A DNA stretch of 64,000 bases from positions 124,001 through 188,000 of IMG/VR virus record IMGVR_UViG_3300044646_001937. The stretch is one strand, 5' to 3'. Below the pieces are notes generated by a model, which searched no databases, had not been told where the DNA came from, and saw only the letters and a list, made by a program, of their open reading frames with translations. This document shows, piece after piece, positions 3,538 to 34,906 of the stretch. The translations under genes were made by a program, and so were the position numbers. The first letter of the stretch is position 1, and every line of letters begins with the position of its first letter.

Positions 3538-4584
3538 ATGTCATTAGAGCCTCAGCAGAATCCTCAGGTTGAGGATACATCTTTTAAAGACAGACTGCTA
3601 GCGATGAAAATGCTTCGCGAGAACATGTTTCTCGCAGAGCCTGAAAGGTATGGCATGGCTGATGTTGCCGAGGATTTGCCAGGCTCATTAAGACCATTAG
3701 GAGACATTGTAAAAAATGTTCTACCGTCCAGAATGATCATATCTGAGGATCCTGCTCAAAGGAAAAAACAGATAGATGCAGCAATTCAAAGAATAAAAGA
3801 AACAAGGCAAGGAGGCAAAGACCTTGGAAAGGAAATGCTGAGTAGTGCAGGCAGCATGGGGATGCATAGTATCCTTCCCAGTTTTGCGTTTGCAGCTATA
3901 GCCAGACTAATGGGTGGCGGAGGTGGGCTTTCCAGACTACACAGATTGAGAGCATCTGGAAGGAGAGCATTATCAGGCACAGCCGCACAAAGAGCAATGC
4001 ACGGCAAGTCCCAGTTACCCAGCCTAAGCCCAACACCAGACAACTATAATAATAGCCTTAAAAGATTTCTACCTTCTTTTACAGGATTAAAAAGATTAGG
4101 AACGCACTGGAAGCCTTCTTTAAAACATGTCGCAAACGATACATTAACAAATGCAGTCATGGCGGCAACTACAGGAGCGGCAGTACCGTTACTCAGTAGA
4201 TATTCAAATGTTTCTGACGCCGCCCTAGAGCAGGCTAGAAAGATAATGGAAGAGCAGCCTTATATTACAAGTCTACCTACAAATGAAATGCTCAGTGTCA
4301 TCAAAGGCGAGAAAGACAACAGAGGAGACAACAAGGCAAGAAACTTTTTACTAGGAGGTTTGGTTGGTGCTGGCTCTGGAGCTGTAGGAGGAGCTGTACC
4401 TAGTTTATTTAGCGGTGGTGGAGCAGTACTTAAAAGTCTCGTTAAAGGCAAACCCTTATTGTCAGGGATTGATCGAAGAATGACTAGCAAGATGCTTGGC
4501 AACGTCAGAAACTCCGCAATGTTTGGAGGAGCTATCGGGGCCCTCACAGGCCCAGAAGTAGCCATGATGGGTGAAAACGAATAA
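3538..4584 (+). CDS. Glycine-zipper hydrophobic protein, putative internal virion/ejection protein
   Basis: Gly/Ala-rich hydrophobic segments (FLLGGLVGAGSGAVGGAVP, AMFGGAIGALTG). Lies in the head module. Confidence 0.45.
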   Translation: MSLEPQQNPQVEDTSFKDRLLAMKMLRENMFLAEPERYGMADVAEDLPGSLRPLGDIVKNVLPSRMIISEDPAQRKKQIDAAIQRIKETRQGGKDLGKEMLSSAGSMGMHSILPSFAFAAIARLMGGGGGLSRLHRLRASGRRALSGTAAQRAMHGKSQLPSLSPTPDNYNNSLKRFLPSFTGLKRLGTHWKPSLKHVANDTLTNAVMAATTGAAVPLLSRYSNVSDAALEQARKIMEEQPYITSLPTNEMLSVIKGEKDNRGDNKARNFLLGGLVGAGSGAVGGAVPSLFSGGGAVLKSLVKGKPLLSGIDRRMTSKMLGNVRNSAMFGGAIGALTGPEVAMMGENE

Positions 4585-4585
4585 T

Positions 4586-5677
4586 ATGCGCTCCAAGGCA
4601 CTCACTCCGATTAGATTTAACCAGATAGGCTCGTTTTATAACTTTCCTAATTGGAGATATCTTATTTATCTAGAACCTAGCAGAGCCAACTTAGCATACT
4701 GCAAAAGAAAGCCAAAAGATGGAGCTGGCTGTCTCTTAAGATACCTGAAAGAGCATGACGACATCTCAGATCGTTCTGTTGTCTCTTTTTCGTTAACCCC
4801 ATTCATATCCAGAAGCATCACCAAGCTGAGCTATTCAGAAAAAACAGCTTTCTATAAACTGTTTAATAAAAAACTTAAACTGCAAGGAGATAAGAAAATA
4901 TACACACCTACCTACAAGGAAGAACATGTAGAGGTTTGGAGCGCAAAATACATATCGCTAATTACTGACGAGCCTCTCAGGAATTTCTTATATCATGTAG
5001 CAAAGATTAAATACAATCATGATTACGACTTTGCGGTAAAGTTTAGAAACTCTGCAGAACATCAGCGCAACTTCTGCGTCATAGGTTATTGTATATTTGC
5101 CGGATTATCTGATGCAGTCATAGCCCATAGATACAAGCTTTTCCCAGGGCAGATACGAGCAATACGAGAATTGTTTTTTGATTTTAAAAACGCTCCAACA
5201 GATGTAGTAGCTAGGGCAGCATATTTTACACAACTTACAGACAATCAAATTATCAGTGATGTCGACAGAAGGTATTTTAAAATCATTGGCTCTCTTGGTG
5301 AGCTAGGATTAAAAGCAGACGCAGACCCATCAAGCCTGACCATAGAAGAAAAAGATAGGTTGAATAGCTATCTTGCCGATACAATGGTGGACAATGTGAC
5401 TTCCTTATATTTCAGTATTGAAGATAAGAAAGATGCACTAGCCTACAATACGGTTATTAACAACCTGGCCTCCTTCTTTATCAAGAAGGAAGAAATTAAT
5501 TATTACAGAGCCAAAGTTAGACATCTTGACGCCAGCACTACCAGGATTGTTAATGAACGCTCAGATTATGACACAAGTATGCAGGAAGAGGACAGATTGG
5601 CGATAGAAATGATCTCTCAGCTGGCTTTAAAGGAAAATCCTGCCCCTGAATATAAAGTAATTACTGAATTGAAATAA
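4586..5677 (+). CDS. Hypothetical protein, possible helix-turn-helix
   Basis: The likely start is the ATG at 4586 (TAA-T-ATG coupling) rather than the GTG at 4571. GLSDAVIAHRYKLFPGQIRAIRELFFD resembles an HTH. Confidence 0.5.
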   Translation: MRSKALTPIRFNQIGSFYNFPNWRYLIYLEPSRANLAYCKRKPKDGAGCLLRYLKEHDDISDRSVVSFSLTPFISRSITKLSYSEKTAFYKLFNKKLKLQGDKKIYTPTYKEEHVEVWSAKYISLITDEPLRNFLYHVAKIKYNHDYDFAVKFRNSAEHQRNFCVIGYCIFAGLSDAVIAHRYKLFPGQIRAIRELFFDFKNAPTDVVARAAYFTQLTDNQIISDVDRRYFKIIGSLGELGLKADADPSSLTIEEKDRLNSYLADTMVDNVTSLYFSIEDKKDALAYNTVINNLASFFIKKEEINYYRAKVRHLDASTTRIVNERSDYDTSMQEEDRLAIEMISQLALKENPAPEYKVITELK

Positions 5678-5697
5678 TCTAAAAATCATGCTATAAC
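5669..5697 (+). promoter_or_regulatory. sigma70-type promoter TTGAAA-N17-TATAAC with extended TG
   Basis: 17-nt spacer, TGc-TATAAC, 13 nt upstream of the ATG at 5711. Confidence 0.65.
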
Positions 5698-5710
5698 TGT
5701 AAACAATCAT

Positions 5711-7222
5711 ATGGACGAGCCAAACATTCTCATTAAATCAGCATTATCCGAAGCAGTTCAAAAGATCAACGGAGGCATGTCCCCTACGGCAGCTCTCAAG
5801 AAAGTTGCGTCTGATTTTGATCTAAACCCCAATTACATTCAGAGAACAGGGGAAGCTTTAAATGTGGCGCTGCATTATAAGCATTTCAAGACAGCCTCCG
5901 ATAGATCTGACGAATTTGAAATTGCAGACATCCCCAAGGCTATTGAAGAAGTTTTTACAGTGAATGAGAAGACCGCTTCAGAATATATCACTGAAACTTT
6001 TGGAAACAATGACGCTAATGAGACGGTGTTTAACTATAACCGCGCACTGTCCAACCCAATCTATAAGCGAGCATTTCTTGAGGTGGTAGGAGCTACGGAA
6101 ACAAATGATTCTTACCCTACCACGTTTAAGACAGTGTATGAAAAGTCTGCAAATTATATCAGCAAACTTGAAAAGTCGGCAGAGGCAGCGGAAGTTGCTA
6201 AGGTTGCAGCAGAGATTGAGTTAAACGACACCTTTTCCACATTGTCAGATTCTTTCAGGAAAGATGCATCCTACAGATCTACGTTTGAAGAATTTGAGTC
6301 ACAAGTATTTGCTAAACACGGAGAAGCAGCTGTTCCCTATATTGATCTACTACATAAAACAGCTTGTCCTAATGATGAGCGTGGAGTGCATGATGATAAA
6401 TACATGATGTTTTCGCAGAGCAAAGAGGCTCAGTTATTTGACCGCCTAATGACCGCAGCCGCTACACTTGTAGAGGCAGAAAAAACAGCAGAAATTAATG
6501 CTGAAAATCTGGCTTACGAAAAAGCCTTTTTAAAAGAGTGTCACCAAATGCTAGGCAAGCAAGCAGAAGAGGAGAAAGAAGAAGCCTCTGAAAAAGATGA
6601 AGTTGAGGAAAAGGGCGAGACTGAAGAGAAAGGCGAAGCGGAAGAAAAAGAGGAAGAAGACCCGGTTTTAGAACAGATTAAAAAAAAAGTCTTAAATCCT
6701 GACGAGAAACAGGCAGCAGCTCTTTCAGAAGATCCTGTCCTTGAACAGGCTATGGAAAAAGACGCTTTTTTAGGTGGGGCTATAAGGGCAGGTGCAGGAT
6801 TGTTAAATACTAGAAGCTTTGGAAAAATGCTGGCCGGCCCGCTAGCGGAGCTTGTAGGAGATCCTGTGACCGAAGCGTTCCATCACAACTTTAAATCTCC
6901 AGCAAAGGCAGTTAAGCCTAACCTTACACTGGATAATATGGAGCGTAGACTTTTATTGCAGGAGCTGATGCTTACTGACCCTATCCTGTCCAAGGTCAAC
7001 CCAGCAAAAGTAGCCAGAGCCTTTGAACAGCTTTTAAGATTATCGCCAGAAATATCCAAACAGAAAGAGGTAGTCAGGGCAGAATTGCGAGCAATGGTTT
7101 CCAGTCAGGCGCTTAGCAAGTTTGATGCGGACTTGCTAGCCAAGACAGATTTGGGTATGCTTAAAAGAAGAGTTGCTACCCAGCAATATAATATGGGAAT
7201 GTCCGATAACTTTAGAATGTAA
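5711..7222 (+). CDS. Putative prohead core/internal protein, K-x-A rich, with acidic tract
   Basis: 16 K-x-A motifs, an EK-rich acidic tract, a duplicated EDPVLEQ, and a C-terminal domain starting FLGGAIRAGAGLL. Confidence 0.55.
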   Translation: MDEPNILIKSALSEAVQKINGGMSPTAALKKVASDFDLNPNYIQRTGEALNVALHYKHFKTASDRSDEFEIADIPKAIEEVFTVNEKTASEYITETFGNNDANETVFNYNRALSNPIYKRAFLEVVGATETNDSYPTTFKTVYEKSANYISKLEKSAEAAEVAKVAAEIELNDTFSTLSDSFRKDASYRSTFEEFESQVFAKHGEAAVPYIDLLHKTACPNDERGVHDDKYMMFSQSKEAQLFDRLMTAAATLVEAEKTAEINAENLAYEKAFLKECHQMLGKQAEEEKEEASEKDEVEEKGETEEKGEAEEKEEEDPVLEQIKKKVLNPDEKQAAALSEDPVLEQAMEKDAFLGGAIRAGAGLLNTRSFGKMLAGPLAELVGDPVTEAFHHNFKSPAKAVKPNLTLDNMERRLLLQELMLTDPILSKVNPAKVARAFEQLLRLSPEISKQKEVVRAELRAMVSSQALSKFDADLLAKTDLGMLKRRVATQQYNMGMSDNFRM

Positions 7223-7227
7223 AATAT

Positions 7228-7605
7228 ATGCCAGCACTACTTAAAATTAAAAGAACTATAGAAAACGACGTCTTCAGAATTAATTTTTCTCTAGACCTTC
7301 TAACCTTATCCGAAGCAGATAAAGAACTTATCCGTAAGTTTGGAGAACCATCAATAAACATAGGAGGTGTTTACTTGGAAGACACTGAAAACGAGTACAC
7401 GCTGCCTGACAAATATCTGCGTGTGCGTACAGACTTACCATACACTCAAGAATTTGATGCTAAATCAAATGAGATTGGGTTTGTCTCTTCTAGAGCACAA
7501 GCCATGGCTTTTGAAGAAGCATTTGTGGTTAAATTTGAAGATGCTTTCACCGCACTTAGAAGCAATACAGATACCTTCACAGGAGAAAGAATTGTAAATA
7601 TTTAA
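7228..7605 (+). CDS. Hypothetical protein (125 aa)
   Basis: Clean ORF tightly packed in the operon, with a TATATG start context. Confidence 0.6.
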   Translation: MPALLKIKRTIENDVFRINFSLDLLTLSEADKELIRKFGEPSINIGGVYLEDTENEYTLPDKYLRVRTDLPYTQEFDAKSNEIGFVSSRAQAMAFEEAFVVKFEDAFTALRSNTDTFTGERIVNI

Positions 7606-7616
7606 CAAGACCTCTA

Positions 7617-9185
7617 ATGCCAGAGCATATCAAAAAAGGTAGTTTTGCTTTATTAAAACATCTACCGATGTTGGCGGGCAAAACCATGCCTGTGTTAGGC
7701 TCTGTACTTAGCGCAGGATCTGCGGTAAATAGGCTAGGCAGCGGAGATCTTTTAGGTGCAGGCCTGGATATAGGCTCAGCCATAACTTCTCCGTTTGCTC
7801 CAATGCTATCGTTACCTATTGATTTAATAAACACAGGTAGAGACATCATGAAAAGCAACGACAACACCAGCTCTACAGATGCTCTAAATGAAAAGCTTGA
7901 AAGAAAAAATTTTATGAAAAACGCTGCATCTCAATTTGCTCAAGATCTGGCTGACCCTCAAGCTGGATTAGATTCTGATTTATATCAGGCAATATCTCCC
8001 ATTATTTCCGCAGGCACGCAAGGACAGCAAAGTCCTGCGGAAGCAAAAAGATTAAGCGACCTACACAATCAGGTCAGGCAAGGGCTAGTAGGGCTGGAAT
8101 ACATGACAGGCTTGAAAAAGAATAAAGCCGAAACATTCTACGATGCACACCCTGTAGAAGCTACAGCAACTGACGCTTTATCTGGCTCTCTACCTGCCGC
8201 AGGAGTATTAGGACTTGCAGGTGTTGGTGAAAACTACAGACGTCAGTGGGCAAACATGAGGAAAACAGAGCCTGCGCAAATGGCTAGATCTGGTAATCCT
8301 GGGGTAGATGTGACTAATGCATCAGAGCTTCTAGAATCTGACAGACCAGACATTGCTAGGTTGTTTGGTACATTGAAAGATGATTCTGAGGGAATGCAGA
8401 AAAGATTGAAGCTGCTGGATAGACTGCAAAGACAACACGCCCCAGGCAGCCCTGAATCGTTTACAGGAAAATTGCAGGCTTATAATAAGGCTAAAGAAGA
8501 TGCAGTAGCAGCACACACAAGTAAGATAAACGAACTGCAAAGCAAACTGAACACAGGCGCTGTATCAGATAGAGGACAAGTTGAGAGCGTTAAAGCATTA
8601 ATGGCCTCACAGACAGCACAACACCAAAAAGAACTAGAAACACTCGAGGGAGTTAAAAAGAAATTGCTAGCCGAAGCAAGACAGAATCCATCTTCAGCAG
8701 CTTTGGAAAAATACGTAAACCTCCAAGAATCCTTAAGAAGAGGAAACATCAACGGAGGATTATCTTCAGCTATAGGCGAACAGGGTACACACATCCCAGG
8801 GCTTAAAGACCTAGCTCAAAAATATAATGTAACCGGAGCGCAGCAGCATTTTGATCCAGAGATACTGGCAGAGATAGCTAAAGAAAATTCTGGAGGTAAA
8901 TTCACAAGCGAACAGATTAAGAATATTGTTTCAGAGCTGGAAAATCCTGCAAATGCTACATCAGGCTTACGTAGATTTTGGTCTAAAGCAAAGATACCTA
9001 CAACCCGAGCAGCCATCGCTGGAGCTGGAGGGTTATCTCTGTATCATCTTCTTAAAATGATGCAGAATCAAAACTACTCAGGCAGCCAGATGAATGAGTG
9101 GAAGAAGAACTTGTTAAAATCCAGAGGAGATTTTGAAGCAGCTCAAGAATTAGAAAGCAGCCAACCTCAGCAACAACTAAGATAA
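7617..9185 (+). CDS. Putative internal virion/ejection protein with hydrophobic Gly-rich segments and a coiled coil
   Basis: Segments PVLGSVLSAGSAVNRLGSGDLLGAGLDIGSA, AAGVLGLAGVG and AAIAGAGGLSLYHLL. Central helical coiled coil. One KNA motif. Confidence 0.45.
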   Translation: MPEHIKKGSFALLKHLPMLAGKTMPVLGSVLSAGSAVNRLGSGDLLGAGLDIGSAITSPFAPMLSLPIDLINTGRDIMKSNDNTSSTDALNEKLERKNFMKNAASQFAQDLADPQAGLDSDLYQAISPIISAGTQGQQSPAEAKRLSDLHNQVRQGLVGLEYMTGLKKNKAETFYDAHPVEATATDALSGSLPAAGVLGLAGVGENYRRQWANMRKTEPAQMARSGNPGVDVTNASELLESDRPDIARLFGTLKDDSEGMQKRLKLLDRLQRQHAPGSPESFTGKLQAYNKAKEDAVAAHTSKINELQSKLNTGAVSDRGQVESVKALMASQTAQHQKELETLEGVKKKLLAEARQNPSSAALEKYVNLQESLRRGNINGGLSSAIGEQGTHIPGLKDLAQKYNVTGAQQHFDPEILAEIAKENSGGKFTSEQIKNIVSELENPANATSGLRRFWSKAKIPTTRAAIAGAGGLSLYHLLKMMQNQNYSGSQMNEWKKNLLKSRGDFEAAQELESSQPQQQLR

Positions 9186-9186
9186 T

Positions 9187-10629
9187 ATGTACAAGGGTCT
9201 AATTAAATTCAGCTCTACAGACGATTGGAATTGGGATGTCGATCCTGTTCAATTAATTCATAATGTAAATACACTCACAAAAGCAGGAGCAGATAACTCT
9301 GAGCTTAAGACAGAAAAGACAGCTGGGCAGACGGATGCTCTGGTAATTGCCCTTGGAGCTTACGAGGGTACAGGCGCAAACAGAAATGGAGATATTTTTA
9401 AAGAAGCAGAATGTTTAAAACATTACAAAACATTCATTAAATCAGGCAGTCGCAAGTCTGATGGATCATATGATGGAAGAGCTTTAAACAGACATCATAA
9501 GAACAAACCAACAGATCCTAAATACGGCAACATCAAAGCTGCGACGTACAATAATAAGATGAAGCGTATTGAGTTGGTTATTGGACTAGACAACGACAAG
9601 TGCGCAGAAGAAATTCAAAAGCTAGCAGAAGGAAAGCAGATCAATGTGAGCATGGCTGCCAAGGTTGCATATGATAAGTGCACATGGTGTGGACATGACG
9701 CTAAAACAGACAGCGATAGATGTAAGCACATCCCTAAAGATCTTGGTGAGATTAATAAGCGCGGAGAGATGTGTAGCATGGATAATATAGATCCTAAATG
9801 GTTCGAACTTTCTATTGTAGGAAGACCTGCAGACCGTATAGGTATGTCGCTAAAACTTGCTTCAGATAATAACTATATCAAGACAGCAAATGATTATAGA
9901 GACCTGTATCCAGGGTTTACAATTCCTGAAGAAGATAACACATTTCTAAACATCTCAAAATACGCAGATGAAAAAAGAAGCCTTGTCAAGAAACTCGCTG
10001 CAATTGAAAAGCATATTGACGGTGTGATGAAGTCTACGCCAGCAAACTCGAAAGATAAATACCTTAAAGAGCAGCGCTCTAAACTAAGCGAAGCAGATGG
10101 CATATCTGATGACACTATTGAGGAGCTTAGAAAGTTCGAACCATCAAAACTTTTAAAAGCACTAGCAGATCATGGCATTGTCTTCTCTCCAGAAGATTTC
10201 GTTAAATACTTATTTGGAGCAAAAGCTCTAGGGGCTAAGTCAGAAGATATGTTTAGTAAAATCAAGAAGCGCCTACCTTCGATGTTTTCAGACATGGACG
10301 AGTCAGGTGATGATGAAATGAACGATGATAAGTACGAACCTTCTGTGTCTGATATTATGCCTAAAGGTTTACTGAATATGGTCAAAGGACTTTTCGATGA
10401 TCATTCGCTATTTGACAAACCTTCCCATAATCGAATTATGAGAATTACTATTGTAAAAAAATCTCCAAAAGCTAGACTAGCTTTGAAAGAAGAGAATACA
10501 AAAGAGGCTGCAGTAGATGAATTATCTAGGCAATACAGTATATATAAATTGGCTGCATTACGCTATATCAACAGTCAAAACAAGCTAGATGAAGACACAA
10601 TCTTTAATGCTTTGATGCAAAACAGATAA
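9187..10629 (+). CDS. Prohead (capsid maturation) serine protease, HK97/assemblin-type fold, with Zn-finger insertion and C-terminal extension
   Basis: Motifs NRNGDIF, RHHKN (candidate catalytic His), VSMA (candidate catalytic Ser), CTWCGH..CKH, and FELSIVGRPAD (cf. L.EVS.V..PA of HK97-type proteases). Lies upstream of the scaffold and capsid genes. Confidence 0.8.
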   Translation: MYKGLIKFSSTDDWNWDVDPVQLIHNVNTLTKAGADNSELKTEKTAGQTDALVIALGAYEGTGANRNGDIFKEAECLKHYKTFIKSGSRKSDGSYDGRALNRHHKNKPTDPKYGNIKAATYNNKMKRIELVIGLDNDKCAEEIQKLAEGKQINVSMAAKVAYDKCTWCGHDAKTDSDRCKHIPKDLGEINKRGEMCSMDNIDPKWFELSIVGRPADRIGMSLKLASDNNYIKTANDYRDLYPGFTIPEEDNTFLNISKYADEKRSLVKKLAAIEKHIDGVMKSTPANSKDKYLKEQRSKLSEADGISDDTIEELRKFEPSKLLKALADHGIVFSPEDFVKYLFGAKALGAKSEDMFSKIKKRLPSMFSDMDESGDDEMNDDKYEPSVSDIMPKGLLNMVKGLFDDHSLFDKPSHNRIMRITIVKKSPKARLALKEENTKEAAVDELSRQYSIYKLAALRYINSQNKLDEDTIFNALMQNR

Positions 10630-10636
10630 AAAGTGC

Positions 10637-10665
10637 TTGGAACCTCCAACAAATTAAGATAACAT
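10637..10665 (+). promoter_or_regulatory. sigma70-type promoter TTGGAA-N17-TAACAT
   Basis: Intergenic, with a 17-nt spacer. Confidence 0.5.
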
Positions 10666-10686
10666 TTAAGAACAAATTAACCCACT

Positions 10687-11817
10687 ATGTTAAACAAAAT
10701 ACTATCAAAACTCGCTGCTGAACAACCAATTGATCCTGCGGCTGCACCACAAACCGAAGAGATGCATGAAGCTGCAGAAACCCCACAGATGGAAGCAGCT
10801 GAGCACGCTCCAGGCGGATATGAAGAAGCTGGAGAAGGCGGCGGAGATGAGCTTGCACAGATCGAGCAATTGATTTCACAACTTTCCCCAGAAGAAGTTC
10901 AACAGCTGATTCAAGAACTTGAGGGAGGAGGAGCTGGCGCAGGAGGCGACGATACAGCCAACCTCTCGCAAGCAATTGAAGGACATCTCGCAGAAACGCC
11001 TGAAGCCTCAGTCCCTGAAGCTCCAGAAGAAAAGCAGGCAGCTCTTTCTTTTGTTAAGTCTGCGTCATACATTCATGGGTTTTTAAAGTACGCAACCGAT
11101 CAGGGTGTCGATATTCATCAGGCAGTTGACCTGTATGACAGTGCACTATCTCAAGCCATTCACGATCTCAAAGTAGCCTCTTTGAAAGGTAATCAGACAA
11201 AGCTGGATGTTGATAAAGACGGCAAAATCGAAGCATCTGATTTGGCAAAATTGAGAGCAGGCAAAGGCAAGACCGTAAAAAAGGCAAACGTCGGCGACGC
11301 CTTCACCGCAGCAGGAAGAGCTCTTCGAGGAGGTCTTCCTGACAACGTGACAGAAACATTACAGGGGTTACCTCAGCAGGGCGCAGAAGCATTGCGTGGC
11401 GTTGCCGATAAATTAGACCCAGGATTTTTAGAGCAATTAAAAGCGCAAGCCGGCAATGCCGTTAGTGGTGCGGGTAACTTTATGCGAGAGCATGGCATTG
11501 ATCCAACAATCGCAGCAGCGCTTGGCGGAGGTGCTGCTTTAGGCGCTGGAGGCATGGGGCTATACAAACATCTTACTCGTCCAAAGCAAGAGGAAGAAAT
11601 GAAGATGGCTTCTTACTACGATGGATTATTTGAAAGAGCTTCGGAATATGGTCTCTCCCCAGATGAAACGATTAAGCTTGCTGGCTGGTGGGACACTATT
11701 AAAGAAAAAATGCCCCAAAGAGCAGGAATTCCTGGAGCTGTAGGAGGACCCGCACCAATTCCAGGAAGAATGCCTGAAGGCAAGCCTGTTACAGGCGGCA
11801 CAGCTAAAGCTAAATAA
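10687..11817 (+). CDS. Modular internal head protein (acidic region, EF-hand-like loop, glycine zipper)
   Basis: 8 K-x-A motifs, a DVDKDGKIEASD loop, AALGGGAALGAGGMGLY, and two copies of the Y..G...A...G module. Confidence 0.55.
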   Translation: MLNKILSKLAAEQPIDPAAAPQTEEMHEAAETPQMEAAEHAPGGYEEAGEGGGDELAQIEQLISQLSPEEVQQLIQELEGGGAGAGGDDTANLSQAIEGHLAETPEASVPEAPEEKQAALSFVKSASYIHGFLKYATDQGVDIHQAVDLYDSALSQAIHDLKVASLKGNQTKLDVDKDGKIEASDLAKLRAGKGKTVKKANVGDAFTAAGRALRGGLPDNVTETLQGLPQQGAEALRGVADKLDPGFLEQLKAQAGNAVSGAGNFMREHGIDPTIAAALGGGAALGAGGMGLYKHLTRPKQEEEMKMASYYDGLFERASEYGLSPDETIKLAGWWDTIKEKMPQRAGIPGAVGGPAPIPGRMPEGKPVTGGTAKAK

Positions 11818-11830
11818 CAAAAACAAACTA

Positions 11831-11859
11831 TTTACACTGTAATAAAAAAAGTATAAAAT
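11831..11859 (+). promoter_or_regulatory. sigma70-type promoter TTTACA-N17-TAAAAT
   Basis: Intergenic, 17-nt spacer, followed by an A/C-rich leader. Confidence 0.6.
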
Positions 11860-11881
11860 CAAACAATCAACAACCAAATAT

Positions 11882-12781
11882 ATGGCAAAACTAACAAAAC
11901 ACGCAGAAGTATTAAGTCAGCTCCACTCGATGGTTAAAAAGCAGGCAGAAGAAGCTCAGAAGAATATCTCCGGAGTTCCCGGTGGTGATGTTAAATCTGT
12001 AAGCGTTAGCGATCAGCATGAGTCGACTAACAAGAATTCTGTAGGTCCTGAAAATGTGGCGCAGGGTTATCACCAAAAGCCTTCCGAAGATTCCGCAGAG
12101 CCTCTCTCAGGGTCTAAGAGCGCTAGCGATCTTGGTGCAGAAATTCTGGACATCATCCGCAAGCAGGCAGATGCACAGGATTCCGTGACAGGTAAACCAG
12201 GTGACGTTAAGTCTGAAAGCGTTGGAGACGATCAGGAGAATGTTGATAAGAACAGCGTGAAACCCGAGAACAATAAGCAGGACTACAGCCAGAAAGGTTC
12301 AACTGACGACTCCAAGCCACTAGCCGGCGCCAAGAAGGCTGAAGTTGAAGAATTGGCCGCTAAGGTTGCCAGCTATGAATTAGGTCGTCAGTTTTGTGCA
12401 GCCCTTTTAAAGTCTGCATCTGACAGATTTGAACCTAACCAGGAAGAGCTTATGAAGGAAGCAGGTCGCCGTGATTTCGATCAGTTGATCGCGCAGGCTG
12501 CGTCTGAACTTGAAAGCACAGAAGAAGCCGAAAAGCAGGGAGCCGCACATTTTGATGAAATTACAAAGCAGGCCGCACTTAACAAGGCATTAGAAGAAAA
12601 TGCTCTGTTGACTCAGAAAATTGCTGAGTATGAAAACTATATCAAGACCGCCCAGGAGCAGTATCAAGCAGAAACAGCTGCAGCTGCAGCTCAAGAGCAG
12701 CAAGTCAAATTGGCTGAAGCTGTCGCCGATATTGTTTTGAGTAAGTTAAAGTCTGAAGTTGTCCCTGCTGCAGGAGAATAA
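11882..12781 (+). CDS. Putative capsid scaffolding/prohead core protein
   Basis: Acidic and helical with a C-terminal coiled coil. Has 12 K-x-A motifs and two ~60-aa internal repeats. Lies between the protease and capsid genes. Confidence 0.6.
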   Translation: MAKLTKHAEVLSQLHSMVKKQAEEAQKNISGVPGGDVKSVSVSDQHESTNKNSVGPENVAQGYHQKPSEDSAEPLSGSKSASDLGAEILDIIRKQADAQDSVTGKPGDVKSESVGDDQENVDKNSVKPENNKQDYSQKGSTDDSKPLAGAKKAEVEELAAKVASYELGRQFCAALLKSASDRFEPNQEELMKEAGRRDFDQLIAQAASELESTEEAEKQGAAHFDEITKQAALNKALEENALLTQKIAEYENYIKTAQEQYQAETAAAAAQEQQVKLAEAVADIVLSKLKSEVVPAAGE

Positions 12782-12796
12782 CTTTAGTTAGCGTTT

Positions 12797-12958
12797 ATGC
12801 CTGCTGACTCACAAACTAGTGATAGTATTGAGCAGCAGGCATTGAATGCTATAGCTCATTTACCTCCAGAGGATAAAAAGAAGATCCTCGAATATATCCA
12901 CAGCATCATTAATCTAGAAAAAGTTAAAAATGACCAAGGAAGCTCTACACAAGATTGA
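12797..12958 (+). CDS. Small unannotated protein (53 aa, MPADSQTSDSIEQQALNAIAHLPPEDKKKILEYIHS...)
   Basis: Not in the ORF track. Fills the gap, has a TTTATG start, and its helical LPPEDKKKILEYI resembles LSPEEVQQLIQEL in ORF 10687. Confidence 0.55.
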   Translation: MPADSQTSDSIEQQALNAIAHLPPEDKKKILEYIHSIINLEKVKNDQGSSTQD

Positions 12959-13322
12959 AGAATTTGTCAAAATAGCTCTACATGAGATTAATGACCTTAG
13001 GCAGCAGCTAGCTGCCCAAACTACAAAGATTGCATCAGAAGAGCTGCAGAAGGACAAAGAATTGGAAAGCGCTTTAAAGAAAGCTGCTGAAGCTATGTAC
13101 AACTCAGACTTTATTAACGACGAAGAGGAAAAATTCACGTTTGTTAAAAAGGCTAAAGAAGATTCTAAGTACCTAGCAAGAGTTGTTGAGCGTGTGTGTA
13201 ATGCAGCTGATGTAGCTTACATGGGCAAAACAGCCAAAGTAAAATCCTCCAATCACTCTGATGACCCTGTGGTAAGGAGAGCCTTTGGTTACGATAATAA
13301 CTACAGCCTTTTAGACGAATAA
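12930..13322 (+). CDS. Small coiled-coil head/scaffold-associated protein
   Basis: At least 6 K-x-A motifs in 130 aa, and a DDPVV motif like the EDPVL of ORF 5711. Confidence 0.55.
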   Translation: MTKEALHKIEEFVKIALHEINDLRQQLAAQTTKIASEELQKDKELESALKKAAEAMYNSDFINDEEEKFTFVKKAKEDSKYLARVVERVCNAADVAYMGKTAKVKSSNHSDDPVVRRAFGYDNNYSLLDE

Positions 13323-13326
13323 TATT

Positions 13327-13746
13327 ATGAACAACACTCAGCAAGCATATGTTAACGGATTTATTAAAAGGGCAGCTGAAAACGGTTATTCTGAAGACGA
13401 AGCACTTAATCTGCTTAAGCAAGCAGCCGATCCAGCTAATGATGTGCAACCTGGCACAGCTTCTTTAATCTCTCCTGTAGCAGGAGGTTTATTGGCAGCT
13501 CAAGGGTTAGGCGCAATGGTCGGGCATAATTATGCACCTATTAGCGACAAAGAATTACGTGAAGAAATGGCCTACTCTGAAGATCCATCAATCAGCAAAG
13601 CTCTTAAGTATCTTTTAGTTCCTGGCTATTTCGGCTATCGCCAAGCTAAGAACCAAAGACTTGAGTCTGCTTACGATAAATACAGAGATGCGCAGCGTCA
13701 GCAAAACCCGATGATGGGACAGCAATCACAAATACAGCAATATTAA
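13327..13746 (+). CDS. Putative internal head cargo protein with N-terminal leader module
   Basis: N-terminal AYVNGFIKRAAENGYS..LLKQA, followed by hydrophobic PVAGGLLAAQGLGAMVG. Confidence 0.5.
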   Translation: MNNTQQAYVNGFIKRAAENGYSEDEALNLLKQAADPANDVQPGTASLISPVAGGLLAAQGLGAMVGHNYAPISDKELREEMAYSEDPSISKALKYLLVPGYFGYRQAKNQRLESAYDKYRDAQRQQNPMMGQQSQIQQY

Positions 13747-14425: not shown

Positions 14426-15385
14426 ATGGAAAAAATCGCAAATCAAAGAGTGTTCAACGATACGTTCGTTGAAATGGTTAAAGCTGGCGAAGAAAAGAAG
14501 GCAGCAGTGTCTGCACAGTCTTTCACTCGCAACAAGCTTCGTGAAGAAAGCTTCACGGAAAAGATCATCACCCCTATCGACATCAGCAATGATGACCTCG
14601 ACAAGGCTGAGAATCCTGAGCTTCTTGTTAAGTGGAATGATCGTGAGCCTGATACTGCGCCTGCAGTGACAATCCCATTGGGTGTTGTTCCTGACATGTT
14701 CCAGTTCTCTGGTACTCGTTATCCTTCCTACTTCACTCGTATTACGAGTCCGAAGTTCAACAAGGACATCGACCAGCTCCGTAGCTATGATTACGACATC
14801 CGCGCAATCATGCTTGAGTTGAGCACCAAGGACATTGCAACCGAAATCGACACACGCTTTATGCAGCGCGTGGACAGCATCATCGGTCCAGTCAACGCAG
14901 CCAACACTCTCAACGGCATTGGGCTTCCACAGAATGTCACCATCAGCGGTGGTATTACTCGTGAAAACGTCGCAGAAGCATTCAAGGTCATTCAGCGCCT
15001 GAAGGTTCCATTTGGTCCCTCCCAGCCTGATGGCGGCGAAAGCAAGGGCGTTATGCTCATGAACAACGTCACTGCACAGGACTTCGTTAAGATGAGCCGC
15101 AGTGAAGTTGGTGGTGATCTTGCACAGGAAATGTGGGTGAATGGTCTCCCATCCAAGACTCTCTTGGGTGTTAAGCCGATCTACACAATCAAGCGTGACC
15201 TCGTCAAGGATGGCGAAATCTACTTGTTCTCTTCCGAAGAATTCTTCGGTAAGTACTACAGATTGCAGCCATTGACTGTGTTCATGAAGAACGAAGCATA
15301 CTTCTTGGAGTACTTCCAGTACATGAACCTCTCACTCGCAATCGGTAACGTGAAGGGTGTTGTGAAGGTCAGCTTCAACGCTTAA
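14426..15385 (+). CDS. Major capsid protein (HK97 fold)
   Basis: 319 aa. Strong C-ending codon bias (TTC, AAC, ATC, GAC) typical of a highly expressed gene. Spine-helix-like LSTKDIATEIDTRFM and C-terminal LAIGNVKGVVKV. Follows the protease and scaffold genes and is followed by a strong terminator. Confidence 0.85.
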   Translation: MEKIANQRVFNDTFVEMVKAGEEKKAAVSAQSFTRNKLREESFTEKIITPIDISNDDLDKAENPELLVKWNDREPDTAPAVTIPLGVVPDMFQFSGTRYPSYFTRITSPKFNKDIDQLRSYDYDIRAIMLELSTKDIATEIDTRFMQRVDSIIGPVNAANTLNGIGLPQNVTISGGITRENVAEAFKVIQRLKVPFGPSQPDGGESKGVMLMNNVTAQDFVKMSRSEVGGDLAQEMWVNGLPSKTLLGVKPIYTIKRDLVKDGEIYLFSSEEFFGKYYRLQPLTVFMKNEAYFLEYFQYMNLSLAIGNVKGVVKVSFNA

Positions 15386-33283: not shown

Positions 33284-34906
33284 ATGGCCGAAAACATAGA
33301 AGCAACAGTAGAGCGCCTCACAGCCTTCATAGAGCAGAACTACGCCGACGTAGAAGCAGGACCAGGGTCAGTCATCAGCGAGCTACTAATAAAGTTGGCT
33401 GCTACATTACACAATGAGCAGTACAATCTTATTACACAACTAGAACAGGGAAATACATTTTTAAAAGTAGCCGAATCGACTGAAGACACATATTCCCCGA
33501 TAATTGACCAGCTGGCGTCAAACTATAACACAGCCAGAAACGCAGGTATTAAGGTCAAAGGCAGAATCAAGGTAACTATTGACGATGATAATGAATACAA
33601 TTTTACAGCACGTCAGATCCAGTTTATTCAACCCAGCTTAAACCTTAGATATTTCCTGACAACAGATGCTCGTGTAAGATTATCTCCATCTCCAACACTA
33701 GCTGAAACGCAGTTGTATCGCGATAACGGTCTTTACTATTTTATATTAGATGTAGAGGCAGAGTATGCAGGCGAGCAGTATCAGGCGTCTTCAGGAACTT
33801 TGTTTACTGTCGGAGAAAACAATTTTATCGATGGTTTTGTAAAAGCAGAAGCTTATGGTAATTTCTCATCAGGTTTGTCACCAGAAACAGATAAAGAGTT
33901 GGTAGCTAAAATAAAATATAATTTAGGTAACACCAGGTTTGATTCGCCTGCAGGTATAGCAAACAGGTTCAGCAGGGAATTTCCAGGCTTTCAATATCTC
34001 TCTGTATGTGGCGCAAACGATATAGAGATGACTAGGTCTAAACAAAACGCGCTAGGCATATCAACATTCGGTAAGGCTGACGTGTATGTAAGGTCAAGCA
34101 TTGGGCCGCAAGTAATGCACCTTAAGAAGCAGGCCACAAAAACTGCAGAAAACACATGGACTATTGATATGTTGAATCATGAAGTTCCAGGCTTTTACAA
34201 TATTGTTAGTATTATTCCTGATGTGGTAGACATGTCACTGGGTGGAACATTGCTACAGAAAACGCCTATAGCCTACAGTTACGCATACTATCCTGAAAAA
34301 AGAAATAACGAGTTGTATAGTGTCATAGATGCAAGGTTTACAAAATATCAAACAGCAACCGTCACACTTGATTATGCCGACCCTGGTAATGCAGAAATAG
34401 GAAGCAATGCTTATTTCTTACTGCAGGTTAACTATCAACCTAATATTGCGGAAATGCAAGACCTGCTATTGTCTGACACTGAAAGATTAGCTTGCGCAGA
34501 CTATCTTGTAAAAGCAGTGATTCCATGTATGGTTTCACTGAATATTCAGCTACTTAAGAAAAGACCAACAGACACGTTTGAGTCACTGAATATTCAGCAG
34601 CTTAAAAAAGATATTTTCTTATATATTAACACAATTCCATTTGGAGAAGAATTGCATGCATCTAGAATAGTAGATATATGTCATAATTACGACATCAGAC
34701 GAGTAGATCTACCGATAAGCATGAAGGGTGTCATCCTATGTCCAGACGGAACCAGCCTACCTATTTCAGGCAATGACGCGCTAACCATCCCAAATAATCT
34801 GGCTAAGGGGGTAACTCCAAAAACAACAGCTTATTTCATAGACTATTACAGAACAGAAAACGGGCAGATCAACCCTATTGATAACATAGGCTTAAATATT
34901 GTTTAA
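33284..34906 (+). CDS. Baseplate J-like wedge protein
   Basis: Motifs GPGSVISELL, IDQLASNY..R..G, ETDKELVAK and GKADVYV. Confidence 0.8.
   Translation: MAENIEATVERLTAFIEQNYADVEAGPGSVISELLIKLAATLHNEQYNLITQLEQGNTFLKVAESTEDTYSPIIDQLASNYNTARNAGIKVKGRIKVTIDDDNEYNFTARQIQFIQPSLNLRYFLTTDARVRLSPSPTLAETQLYRDNGLYYFILDVEAEYAGEQYQASSGTLFTVGENNFIDGFVKAEAYGNFSSGLSPETDKELVAKIKYNLGNTRFDSPAGIANRFSREFPGFQYLSVCGANDIEMTRSKQNALGISTFGKADVYVRSSIGPQVMHLKKQATKTAENTWTIDMLNHEVPGFYNIVSIIPDVVDMSLGGTLLQKTPIAYSYAYYPEKRNNELYSVIDARFTKYQTATVTLDYADPGNAEIGSNAYFLLQVNYQPNIAEMQDLLLSDTERLACADYLVKAVIPCMVSLNIQLLKKRPTDTFESLNIQQLKKDIFLYINTIPFGEELHASRIVDICHNYDIRRVDLPISMKGVILCPDGTSLPISGNDALTIPNNLAKGVTPKTTAYFIDYYRTENGQINPIDNIGLNIV
34535..34598. 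repeat. Direct repeat TCACTGAATATTCAGC, two copies 48 bp apart, each containing the palindrome CTGAATATTCAG
   Basis: Copies at 34535-34550 and 34583-34598, encoding SLNIQ twice. Confidence 0.8.

What the first reader, a model, noticed from the sequence alone, without database searches (positions are those of the whole stretch)
3538..13746. Set of glycine-zipper, membrane-active candidates among the head genes, several unmasked by K-x-A cleavage
Seen: GxxxG-rich hydrophobic stretches occur in 3538 (LLGGLVGAGSGAVGG), 7617, 10687 (AALGGGAALGAGGMGLY) and 13327 (VAGGLLAAQGLGAMVG). Predicted cuts would create hydrophobic or amphipathic N-termini: MEKDA|FLGGAIRAGAGLL in 5711, VKKA|NVGDAFTAAGRAL and IKLA|GWWDTIK in 10687. 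ORF 3538 itself has no K-x-A. Inference: these are packaged, protease-activated ejection proteins that form a trans-envelope conduit or an early membrane compartment, conceptually like cleavage-exposed fusion peptides.
Basis: inference. Interest (0 to 1): 0.66.

Follow-up and report, generated by a model that had tools for sequence, protein, structure and literature searches.

The report
Glycine-rich internal head proteins of a jumbo phage
Several fast-evolving genes beside the capsid gene of an uncultured 204-kb phage carry glycine/alanine-rich greasy helices. They probably encode proteins that are loaded into the head, trimmed at a K-x-A motif and injected, but membrane activity remains an inference.

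Summary
The quoted strings are all present at the stated coordinates. In the single sequences GxxxG is not above composition. Across families the charge-free Gly/Ala-rich segments keep their positions, despite only 28-48% identity while neighbours are 60-96% identical. Gly-Gly spacing is periodic at i+2, i+4 and i+6.

K-x-A is a real signal: 76 observed against 36 expected in head-module ORFs, and 316 against 315 elsewhere. Its lysines are conserved 92% against 71.5% for other lysines. The motif is invariant in the capsid protein N-arm of three distant lineages.

New here: 13327 and 10687 carry a 33-residue helical-hairpin leader ending LLK-x-A. Eight ORFs of this genome have it, as do at least 598 protein clusters in public data. 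It is nearly always N-terminal, on hypervariable cargo, and a third of that cargo has Gly/Ala-rich segments. This parallels the T4 capsid-targeting sequence.

The same segment metric picks out the known membrane-inserting regions of T7 gp16 and all three P22 ejection proteins.

Cleavage "unmasking" is supported for 5711 and the 13327 family. It is not supported for the two 10687 cuts, and it is not significant genome-wide. Packaging and processing are likely. Membrane insertion is plausible but untested. A trans-envelope conduit is doubtful for a contractile-tailed phage.

The parts
3538..4584 (+). ORF 3538 (348 aa). It has a conserved N-terminal domain, four Gly/Ala-rich charge-free helices and no K-x-A.
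   Evidence: Its family has 18 proteins, all metagenomic.
3847..3930 (+). 3538 segment 1 (residues 104-131).
   Evidence: AF2 models it as a helix with pLDDT about 65-70.
4141..4197 (+). 3538 segment 2 (residues 202-220; G213 invariant).
4342..4431 (+). 3538 segment 3 (residues 269-298; G273 invariant).
   Evidence: Sub-threshold Bacteriocin_IIc match.
4516..4557 (+). 3538 segment 4 (residues about 327-340; G334 and G338 invariant).
5711..7222 (+). ORF 5711 (503 aa). It is acidic and scaffold-like, with 16 K-x-A sites that are mostly conserved.
6758..6862 (+). 5711 K350-D-A352, followed by F353 and a Gly/Ala stretch of variable length.
7617..9185 (+). ORF 7617 (522 aa) with one K-x-A.
   Evidence: In the AF2 model the central helical part 230-450 is confident and the Gly/Ala parts are not.
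7671..7874 (+). 7617 N-terminal Gly-rich module (residues 19-86, with a GD-x-LGAG-x-D core).
   Evidence: A paralogous copy lies in the 826-aa ORF at genome 114565-117045, minus strand (hmmsearch 1.1e-09). Some homologues lack the module.
7917..7925 (+). 7617 K101-N-A103, the boundary after the N-terminal module.
8982..9071 (+). 7617 C-terminal conserved Gly/Ala stretch ending G-L-Y-H-L-L-K. About 20 uncharged residues sit between basic residues in the family.
9187..10629 (+). Prohead protease candidate (480 aa), itself carrying 12 conserved K-x-A sites.
   Evidence: phrog_18299 at 2.4e-09. tblastn matches to Arash gp222, Vibrio phage D69 and Bacillus phage G gp19..
10687..11817 (+). ORF 10687 (376 aa). 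It has an acidic N-terminus, two leader-type mini-domains, an EF-hand-like loop and one Gly/Ala-Tyr stretch.
11053..11148 (+). 10687 mini-domain copy 1 (residues 123-154), preceded by K-S-A.
   Evidence: 2.9e-13.
11503..11565 (+). 10687 Gly/Ala stretch ending G-L-Y-K (residues 273-293).
   Evidence: Similar stretches lie 10-40 residues before the last mini-domain in 10687-like proteins.
11599..11691 (+). 10687 mini-domain copy 2 (residues 305-335), preceded by K-M-A.
   Evidence: 4e-13.
13327..13746 (+). ORF 13327 (139 aa), built as leader, K-x-A, Gly/Ala stretch and a conserved C-terminal domain.
13336..13428 (+). 13327 N-terminal leader (residues 4-34), ending L-L-K31-Q-A33.
   Evidence: 4.3e-17.
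13444..13524 (+). 13327 Gly/Ala-rich hydrophobic stretch (residues 40-66; KD19 maximum 1.56).
14495..14503 (+). Capsid protein K24-K-A26, invariant in the window, Arash gp226 and the D69 capsid protein. It is a likely maturation site.

Best explanation
The window comes from a complete 204-kb virus record with terminal repeats, probably a contractile-tailed phage, whose virion analogue in Arash carries an RNA polymerase.

ORFs 3538, 7617, 10687 and 13327 (and in part 5711) are internal head proteins. They are built into the prohead core and trimmed by the prohead protease (9187) at K-x-A.

Two of them, 13327 and 10687, use a 33-residue helix-turn-helix leader that ends in LLK-x-A. The same leader tags hundreds of hypervariable small proteins in this phage clade. 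It therefore acts like the T4 capsid-targeting sequence: it loads cargo into the scaffold core, which displays copies of the same mini-domain, and is then cut off.

The Gly/Ala-rich, charge-free helices are a recurrent cargo module. They are too weakly hydrophobic to be inserted into the membrane during synthesis, so the proteins stay soluble and can be packaged. After ejection through the tail they are proposed to insert into the host inner membrane as helical hairpins. These would pack through small-residue faces and help open or hold the passage for DNA and virion proteins.

Shown: the segments and their conservation, the K-x-A enrichment and conservation, and the leader and its distribution.
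Inferred: cleavage, packaging, ejection and membrane insertion.

The confidence of 0.45 is for the whole chain. Packaging plus processing alone is about 0.75, and a membrane role after ejection about 0.4.
For: Context:
- The window is G000:C1:124001-188000 of a 204,454-bp record with direct terminal repeats.
- The protease matches phrog_18299.
- The capsid protein matches Arash gp226 and phrog_2522.
- A baseplate wedge match lies at 33284.

K-x-A:
- 76 observed vs 36.2 expected in head-module ORFs, and 316 vs 314.9 in the rest. K-x-A-[SAG] is 32 vs 8.7.
- It is also enriched in the Arash and D69 head modules.
- K-x-A lysines are conserved in 287/313 comparisons, other lysines in 843/1179 (odds ratio 4.4).
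- It is invariant at capsid protein residues 24-26 in three lineages.

Leader:
- Eight ORFs of this genome carry it, at 1e-8 to 1e-17.
- 598 clusters match at E<=1e-3 among 1.84 billion representatives.
- 114 of the best 150 have it at residue 1, on cargo of 49-799 aa, and all of these have K-x-[AS] at its end.
- Cargo includes an R2K ATP-grasp, MazG and HExxH proteins.

Gly/Ala segments:
- They are conserved in position while the proteins diverge fastest in the module.
- Their spacing is periodic.
- 48/150 leader proteins carry them, against 39/224 genome ORFs; that is 2.37 vs 0.84 segments per 1000 residues.
- The same metric finds P22 gp7, gp20 and gp16, and T7 gp16 residues 319-413 and 1132-1270. 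Those T7 stretches are the regions a review names as the putative membrane-crossing parts of a protein that purifies soluble (PMC8954989).

Virion evidence: Arash gp220-225, the positional analogues, were found in virions by mass spectrometry.

T4 precedent: diverse internal proteins share only a capsid-targeting sequence (PMC3012670).
Against: - There is no direct evidence of cleavage, packaging or membrane binding for any of these proteins.
- Hydrophobicity is below the classical transmembrane threshold.
- Pfam glycine-zipper models match only below threshold.
- The AF2 models give low confidence for the segments. No fold match was found.
- The Arash proteome lists 116 proteins, including metabolic enzymes, so detection there is not specific.
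- K-x-A sites are not preferentially followed by such segments in this genome.
- 3538 has neither a leader nor K-x-A, so its route into the head is unknown.
- The Gly/Ala stretches in 5711 and 10687 are not well conserved among close relatives.
- A contractile tail already spans the outer envelope, which removes the need for a full conduit.
Confidence: 0.45

Rival explanations
1. Core or scaffold role only. The Gly/Ala-rich helices are self-association surfaces that hold the prohead core together. The proteins are chopped at K-x-A and leave the head before DNA packaging, so nothing acts on membranes.
For: - 5711, 10687, 11882 and the ORF at genome 193591 (15 sites in 353 aa) are dense in K-x-A, as expected for scaffolds degraded to peptides.
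- 10687 carries mini-domain repeats flanked by K-x-A, as do Arash gp223 and D69_0271.
- Small-residue helix packing works equally well in soluble bundles.
Against: - 3538 has no K-x-A and 7617 has one, so they would survive maturation.
- The classical scaffolds P22 gp8 and T7 gp9 lack such segments, whereas the ejection proteins have them.
- The Arash analogues gp221 and gp224 were recovered from virions with full coverage.
- The leader-tagged Gly/Ala hairpin proteins are hypervariable, which is unlike structural core parts.
Confidence: 0.22
2. The proteins act in the producing cell as weak membrane anchors. They might tether prohead initiation to the inner membrane, as reported for T4, or serve lysis or exclusion functions. 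They would not be ejected cargo.
For: - The 7617 family has a C-terminal stretch of about 20 uncharged residues with a Tyr and basic flank, which looks like a tail anchor.
- Genuine small transmembrane proteins sit among the leader genes at genome 58622 and 59368.
- Proteolysis is proposed to release SPN3US proheads from the inner membrane (PMC10052503).
Against: - Hydrophobicity is marginal.
- No signal peptides were seen.
- The leader with K-x-A processing, and the position inside the head module, argue for incorporation into proheads.
- Roughly ten such proteins is more than an anchor role would need.
Confidence: 0.1
3. The segments are low-complexity Gly/Ala linkers of fast-evolving, largely disordered internal proteins. 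These proteins have other roles, for example anti-defence, and the segments have no specific function.
For: - Single-sequence GxxxG counts are at the composition level.
- AF2 confidence is low.
- Most leader cargo is low-complexity and matches no Pfam family.
- The i+2 spacing is as enriched as i+4.
Against: - Glycines are invariant and positions conserved at 28-48% identity.
- The segments are charge-free and among the most hydrophobic stretches of the proteome, which is unlike typical disordered linkers.
- The same signature marks the functional membrane regions of known ejection proteins.
Confidence: 0.12

Closest known systems
T4 internal proteins with the capsid-targeting sequence, cut by the gp21 prohead protease
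   Same: A short conserved N-terminal leader sits on highly diverse cargo. It ends at the consensus motif that is also found in the capsid and scaffold proteins. The cargo genes are hypervariable.
   Different: The leader is about 33 residues and a predicted helical hairpin, not about 10 residues. The motif is K-x-A rather than L/I-x-E. The protease belongs to another family (phrog_18299). Leader copies also occur inside a scaffold-like protein and at a C-terminus. A third of the cargo carries Gly/Ala-rich hydrophobic helices. No cleavage or packaging data exist.
Podovirus ejection proteins (T7 gp14, gp15, gp16; P22 gp7, gp20, gp16)
   Same: Both are head-internal, fast-diverging, alpha-helical proteins. 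Both have marginally hydrophobic Gly/Ala-rich stretches in otherwise soluble proteins, which refold to enter membranes. One metric detects both sets.
   Different: No sequence or profile similarity was found. The host phage has a contractile-tail baseplate, so no periplasm-spanning tube should be needed. Many members here are small leader-tagged hairpins. Ejection has not been shown.
Giant-phage head proteolysis (phiKZ, SPN3US; A-x-E motif, ejection-protein bolus, virion RNA polymerase)
   Same: Both are large phages with a virion RNA polymerase analogue and many internal head proteins. In both, a three-residue motif is repeated within propeptides, and propeptides are cut into pieces.
   Different: The motif, the protease family and the small 319-aa capsid protein all differ. 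No homology to phiKZ-type head proteins was found in the searches run here.
Pfam glycine-zipper membrane hairpins (Gly-zipper_YMGG, Gly-zipper_Omp, Rick_17kDa_Anti, Mic10/DUF543, C19orf12, class IIc bacteriocins)
   Same: Both have paired Gly-rich helices with i+4 small-residue spacing. Weak profile matches fall in exactly these stretches.
   Different: All matches lie below the curated thresholds. There is no lipobox or signal peptide. The context is a phage head module.

Membership tests
Pfam glycine-zipper families (PF13441, PF13488, PF13436, PF05433) | Profile match at or above the gathering score | tested here: not met
   The window ORFs give no hit at E<=0.01. Family members and paralogues reach only 12-16 bits against cut-offs of 24-29. 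Two homologues of 3538 carry a precomputed PF13441 flag.
Pfam glycine-zipper families (PF13441, PF13488, PF13436, PF05433) | Repeated small-xxx-small spacing in a hydrophobic helix | tested here: met
   Across 162 family segments, Gly-Gly at i+4 has z 6.7 and small-small at i+4 has z 10.5. Gly-Gly at i+2 is equally enriched. The spacing is not significant in the single window sequences.
T4-type capsid-targeting leader and internal-protein system | One conserved short leader on many unrelated cargo proteins | tested here: met
   Eight ORFs in this genome carry it. 598 clusters match in the library. 114 of the best 150 have it at residue 1, on cargo of 49-799 aa.
T4-type capsid-targeting leader and internal-protein system | The leader is removed by the prohead protease at the motif shared with capsid and scaffold proteins | tested here: inconclusive
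   K-x-[AS] ends all 114 leaders. The motif is enriched, conserved and present in the capsid protein N-arm. There is no protein-level evidence of cutting.
T4-type capsid-targeting leader and internal-protein system | The cargo is present inside mature heads and is injected | not testable with these tools
   The only evidence is the low-specificity virion proteome of the distant relative Arash.
T4-type capsid-targeting leader and internal-protein system | Sequence homology to the T4 leader or gp21 | not tested
   The protease matches phrog_18299, not a named T4 family. No direct comparison with T4 sequences was run.
Podovirus ejection proteins (T7 gp14-16, P22 gp7/20/16) | Homology to a known ejection-protein family | tested here: not met
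   The PHROGs and Pfam scans returned nothing for 3538, 5711, 7617, 10687 or 13327.
Podovirus ejection proteins (T7 gp14-16, P22 gp7/20/16) | Marginally hydrophobic Gly/Ala-rich putative membrane regions in a soluble internal protein | tested here: met
   The same metric detects T7 gp16 residues 319-413 and 1132-1270 and P22 gp7, gp20 and gp16, but not the scaffolds. The regions are named in PMC8954989.
Podovirus ejection proteins (T7 gp14-16, P22 gp7/20/16) | Ejection, and assembly of a channel in the envelope | not testable with these tools
   The homo-oligomer prediction for 13327 gave no answer.
Phage prohead (head maturation) protease | Profile match, and a position between the portal-side genes and the scaffold and capsid genes | tested here: met
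   phrog_18299 at 2.4e-09 over residues 64-215. There is synteny with Arash gp222 and D69_0270. Catalytic residues were not examined.

The most novel reading that the evidence does not exclude
An uncultured jumbo-phage clade runs a leader-directed capsid-loading system. A 33-residue hairpin leader ending LLK-x-A is cut by the prohead protease, and the system stocks the head with a hypervariable arsenal. About a third of that arsenal consists of small glycine-zipper helical hairpins. These would be delivered through a contractile tail and form or remodel the inner-membrane entry site for DNA and the virion RNA polymerase. That would make them a missing protein component of inner-membrane passage in large myoviruses.
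Probability: 0.25. Interest if true: 0.8.

Novelty: new variant of a known kind. Interest (0 to 1): 0.6.

Why it matters
How contractile-tailed and giant phages get DNA and bulky virion proteins across the inner membrane is poorly understood. The proteins responsible are mostly unnamed.

This locus offers concrete candidates. It also offers a simple, testable grammar of leader, K-x-A site and cargo for which proteins enter the head in a whole uncultured clade.

If the leader works like the T4 targeting sequence, it marks hundreds of injected proteins of unknown function. It could also be used to load foreign proteins into these capsids.

If the segments turn out to be only core-packing elements, the K-x-A and leader result would still define a new maturation motif and substrate set.

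Tried and rejected
- PHROGs and Pfam scans of all ten ORFs between 1310 and 13746 found only the protease, plus a weak EF-hand/dockerin loop in 10687.
- Megablast of the region against isolated phages found nothing. The only cultured relatives are Arash and Vibrio phages D69, D148 and D181, at 27-31% identity.
- AF2 of 3538 gave mean pLDDT 54.6, all helical, and is not fit for fold search.
- AF2 of 7617 gave 65.7, with only the central helices confident. Foldseek against the PDB gave no match at E<=0.001.
- The four-copy complex prediction for 13327 returned no verdict. It counts neither for nor against self-association.
- ESM Atlas searches gave leads only: PT-TG and LPD22 clusters at 0.77-0.81 for 3538, and nothing for 13327. 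No member of the 3538 family matched PT-TG in Pfam.
- The leader profile against PDB sequences hit only designed helical repeats, meaning a generic helix-Gly-helix.
- phmmer of 1310 and of the protease against the PDB found nothing. I therefore do not call 1310 a portal. Its Arash homologue gp218 is listed only as a 'structural protein', and Arash annotates gp204 as the portal.
- A profile of the 7617 C-terminal stretch did not retrieve the look-alike stretches in 10687 or 61760, so that resemblance is compositional.
- The idea that K-x-A generally sits right before a Gly/Ala stretch was tested and rejected for this genome.
- An encapsulin-type cargo-peptide reading of the G-L-Y-basic stretches was considered. 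It was dropped because the segments are long, multiple per protein and not terminal.
- The reads tools and alternative genetic codes were not needed and were not used.


Full report
**Setting.** The window is bases 124001-188000 of a 204,454-bp virus record with direct terminal repeats, rated complete. The + strand reads as follows:
- the end of an RNA polymerase beta-prime-like gene;
- a 736-aa gene (1310) homologous to Arash gp218;
- 3538, 4571, 5711, 7228 and 7617;
- a prohead protease candidate, 9187 (phrog_18299, 2.4e-09);
- 10687, 11882, 12797, 12930, 13327 and 13900;
- a 319-aa capsid protein, 14426 (28% identical to Arash gp226; weak phrog_2522 match).

A baseplate wedge match lies downstream. 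The only cultured relatives are Salmonella phage Arash, a myovirus, and three Vibrio phages, at 27-31% identity. Five metagenomic relatives with about 77% identical proteases gave syntenic loci L003 and L005-L008.

**The observation.** Every quoted peptide is present.
- In the single sequences GxxxG is not more frequent than shuffling predicts.
- The stretches fall below the usual Kyte-Doolittle transmembrane cut, at 1.13-1.56.
- What stands out is their kind. They are charge-free Gly/Ala/Leu stretches in the top 0.2-1.5% of hydrophobicity for this proteome, and they are not amphipathic.
- They also persist. The 3538, 7617, 10687 and 13327 orthologues are only 28-48% identical, while neighbours are 60-96% identical, yet the stretches stay in place.
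- Wider families from the word search show four conserved stretches with invariant glycines in 3538.
- They show an N-terminal Gly-rich module and a strongly conserved C-terminal stretch in 7617.
- They show a conserved stretch in 13327.
- Over 162 distinct family segments, glycine spacing is enriched at i+2, i+4 and i+6.

**K-x-A.**
- Head-module ORFs hold 76 K-x-A against 36.2 expected from per-protein shuffles. The other 211 ORFs hold 316 against 314.9. With a small residue after the motif the head-module figures are 32 against 8.7.
- The Arash and D69 head modules show the same excess.
- In orthologue alignments, lysines inside K-x-A are kept in 92% of comparisons, against 71.5% for other lysines.
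- K24-x-A26 of the capsid protein is invariant in all three lineages.
- This is the pattern known for L/I-x-E in T4 and A-x-E in SPN3US. Cleavage itself has not been shown.

**A shared leader.** The N-terminus of 13327 and two internal units of 10687 are copies of one 30-33-residue mini-domain, built as helix, Gly turn, helix.
- A profile finds it in eight ORFs of this genome. Six of these lie in a cluster at 57-63 kb. Five of those start with nearly the same residues and then diverge completely. The sixth is an R2K ATP-grasp-like enzyme that carries the mini-domain at its C-terminus, after a Gly/Ala stretch and K-L-A.
- Against 1.84 billion cluster representatives the profile finds 598 clusters at E<=1e-3 and 129 at E<=1e-10. 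Of the best 150, 114 have a single copy at residue 1 on cargo of 49-799 residues. Every one of these ends the leader with K-x-A or K-x-S.
- Almost no cargo matches Pfam.
- This matches the description of the T4 internal proteins: diverse proteins that share only a capsid-targeting sequence (PMC3012670).
- Arash gp223 and D69_0271 hold three repeats of an analogous unit, bounded on both sides by K-x-A.

**Link between leader and Gly/Ala stretches.**
- 48 of the 150 leader proteins carry such stretches, against 39 of 224 ORFs in this genome. That is 2.37 against 0.84 segments per 1000 residues.
- Many are small proteins made of the leader plus two stretches.
- In the 13327 family, and in small leader ORFs of relatives, the stretch starts at or just after the leader's K-x-A.
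- A K-[DE]-A-F plus Gly/Ala element recurs in 5711, in ORF 51707 of this genome, in Arash gp220 and in D69_0268.
- Taken genome-wide, however, K-x-A is not preferentially followed by such a stretch.
- The two proposed cuts in 10687 are not conserved.

**Comparison with proven ejection proteins.**
- Applied to P22, the same metric marks gp7, gp20 and gp16, plus the holin and two others of 61 ORFs.
- Applied to the T7 late region, it marks gp16 only, at residues 319-413 and 1132-1270.
- It marks neither scaffold.
- A review names those gp16 regions as the putative membrane helices of a protein that purifies soluble and refolds to cross the inner membrane (PMC8954989).
- This is the main support for 'works like an ejection protein'. 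It is not homology: no profile links the families.

**What failed.** Structure prediction gave helical but low-confidence models and no fold match. The oligomer test gave no verdict. The Pfam glycine-zipper models stay below threshold.

**Verdict.**
- Packaging into the prohead and processing at K-x-A are likely, about 0.75.
- A membrane role after ejection is plausible, about 0.4.
- A complete trans-envelope conduit is unlikely for a contractile-tailed phage.
- The early-compartment idea was not tested.
- The finding is best described as a new variant of the known internal-protein and ejection-protein theme, with a new leader and a new protease motif.

Noticed in passing
L010:7322-13001 (genome 57321-63000): A cluster of six leader-bearing genes with unrelated cargo. 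It includes a 65-aa Cys-containing protein and a 286-aa Ser/Pro/Gln-rich protein, and looks like a hypervariable internal-protein locus.
   Followed up: partly
L010:7322-8575: A 417-aa protein with an R2K-clade ATP-grasp match (25.6 bits; cut-off 26.2). It is followed by a Gly/Ala-Tyr stretch, K-L-A and a C-terminal copy of the leader mini-domain.
   Followed up: partly
L012:1092-2153 (genome 193591-194652, outside the window): A 353-aa ORF with 15 K-x-A motifs, the densest in the genome. It is probably another protease substrate, encoded far from the head module.
   Followed up: partly
window 11179-11253: An EF-hand or dockerin-like calcium-binding loop (D-x-D-x-D-G-x-I pattern) in 10687. The same loop follows the leader in unrelated cargo proteins P0109 and P0114.
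   Followed up: no
L010:8623-8991 and L010:9369-9725: Two small proteins with genuine hydrophobic transmembrane-type helices and near-identical Lys/Thr/Pro-rich basic C-termini, interleaved with the leader genes.
   Followed up: no
L008:8399-10957: In one relative the protease gene is an 852-aa ORF. The match to 9187 is split after about residue 165 by an in-frame insert of about 365 residues, possibly an intein or a homing element.
   Followed up: no
L011:4566-7046 (genome 114565-117045, minus strand): An 826-aa Pro/Gln/Ala-rich protein with a paralogous copy of the 7617 N-terminal Gly-rich module. It has K-x-A sites and mini-domain-like units at both ends.
   Followed up: partly
L001:13833-15308 and L009:11980-13395: The Arash and D69 proteases carry a strongly hydrophobic helix near the C-terminus (KD19 of 1.83 and 2.14). 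The window's protease lacks it.
   Followed up: no
L007:6074-7465: A 463-aa ORF with four repeats of a very hydrophobic Thr/Ser/Ala/Ile-rich unit, at the position of the 125-aa ORF 7228.
   Followed up: no
L017:41-862 and L015:8512-8919: Genes next to leader-bearing genes carry DUF3008 and DUF5661. One protein combines DUF3008, K-K-A, the leader, K-Q-A and an HExxH peptidase-like domain.
   Followed up: no
window 40264-63242: Three very large + strand ORFs of 2237, 1773 and 3616 aa downstream of the baseplate region. They were not examined.
   Followed up: no
genome 64958-74570 (outside the window): Several 540-815-aa ORFs with collagen-like G-x-T repeats, probably fibres. The strict segment filter picks them up but they are unrelated to the finding.
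   Followed up: no
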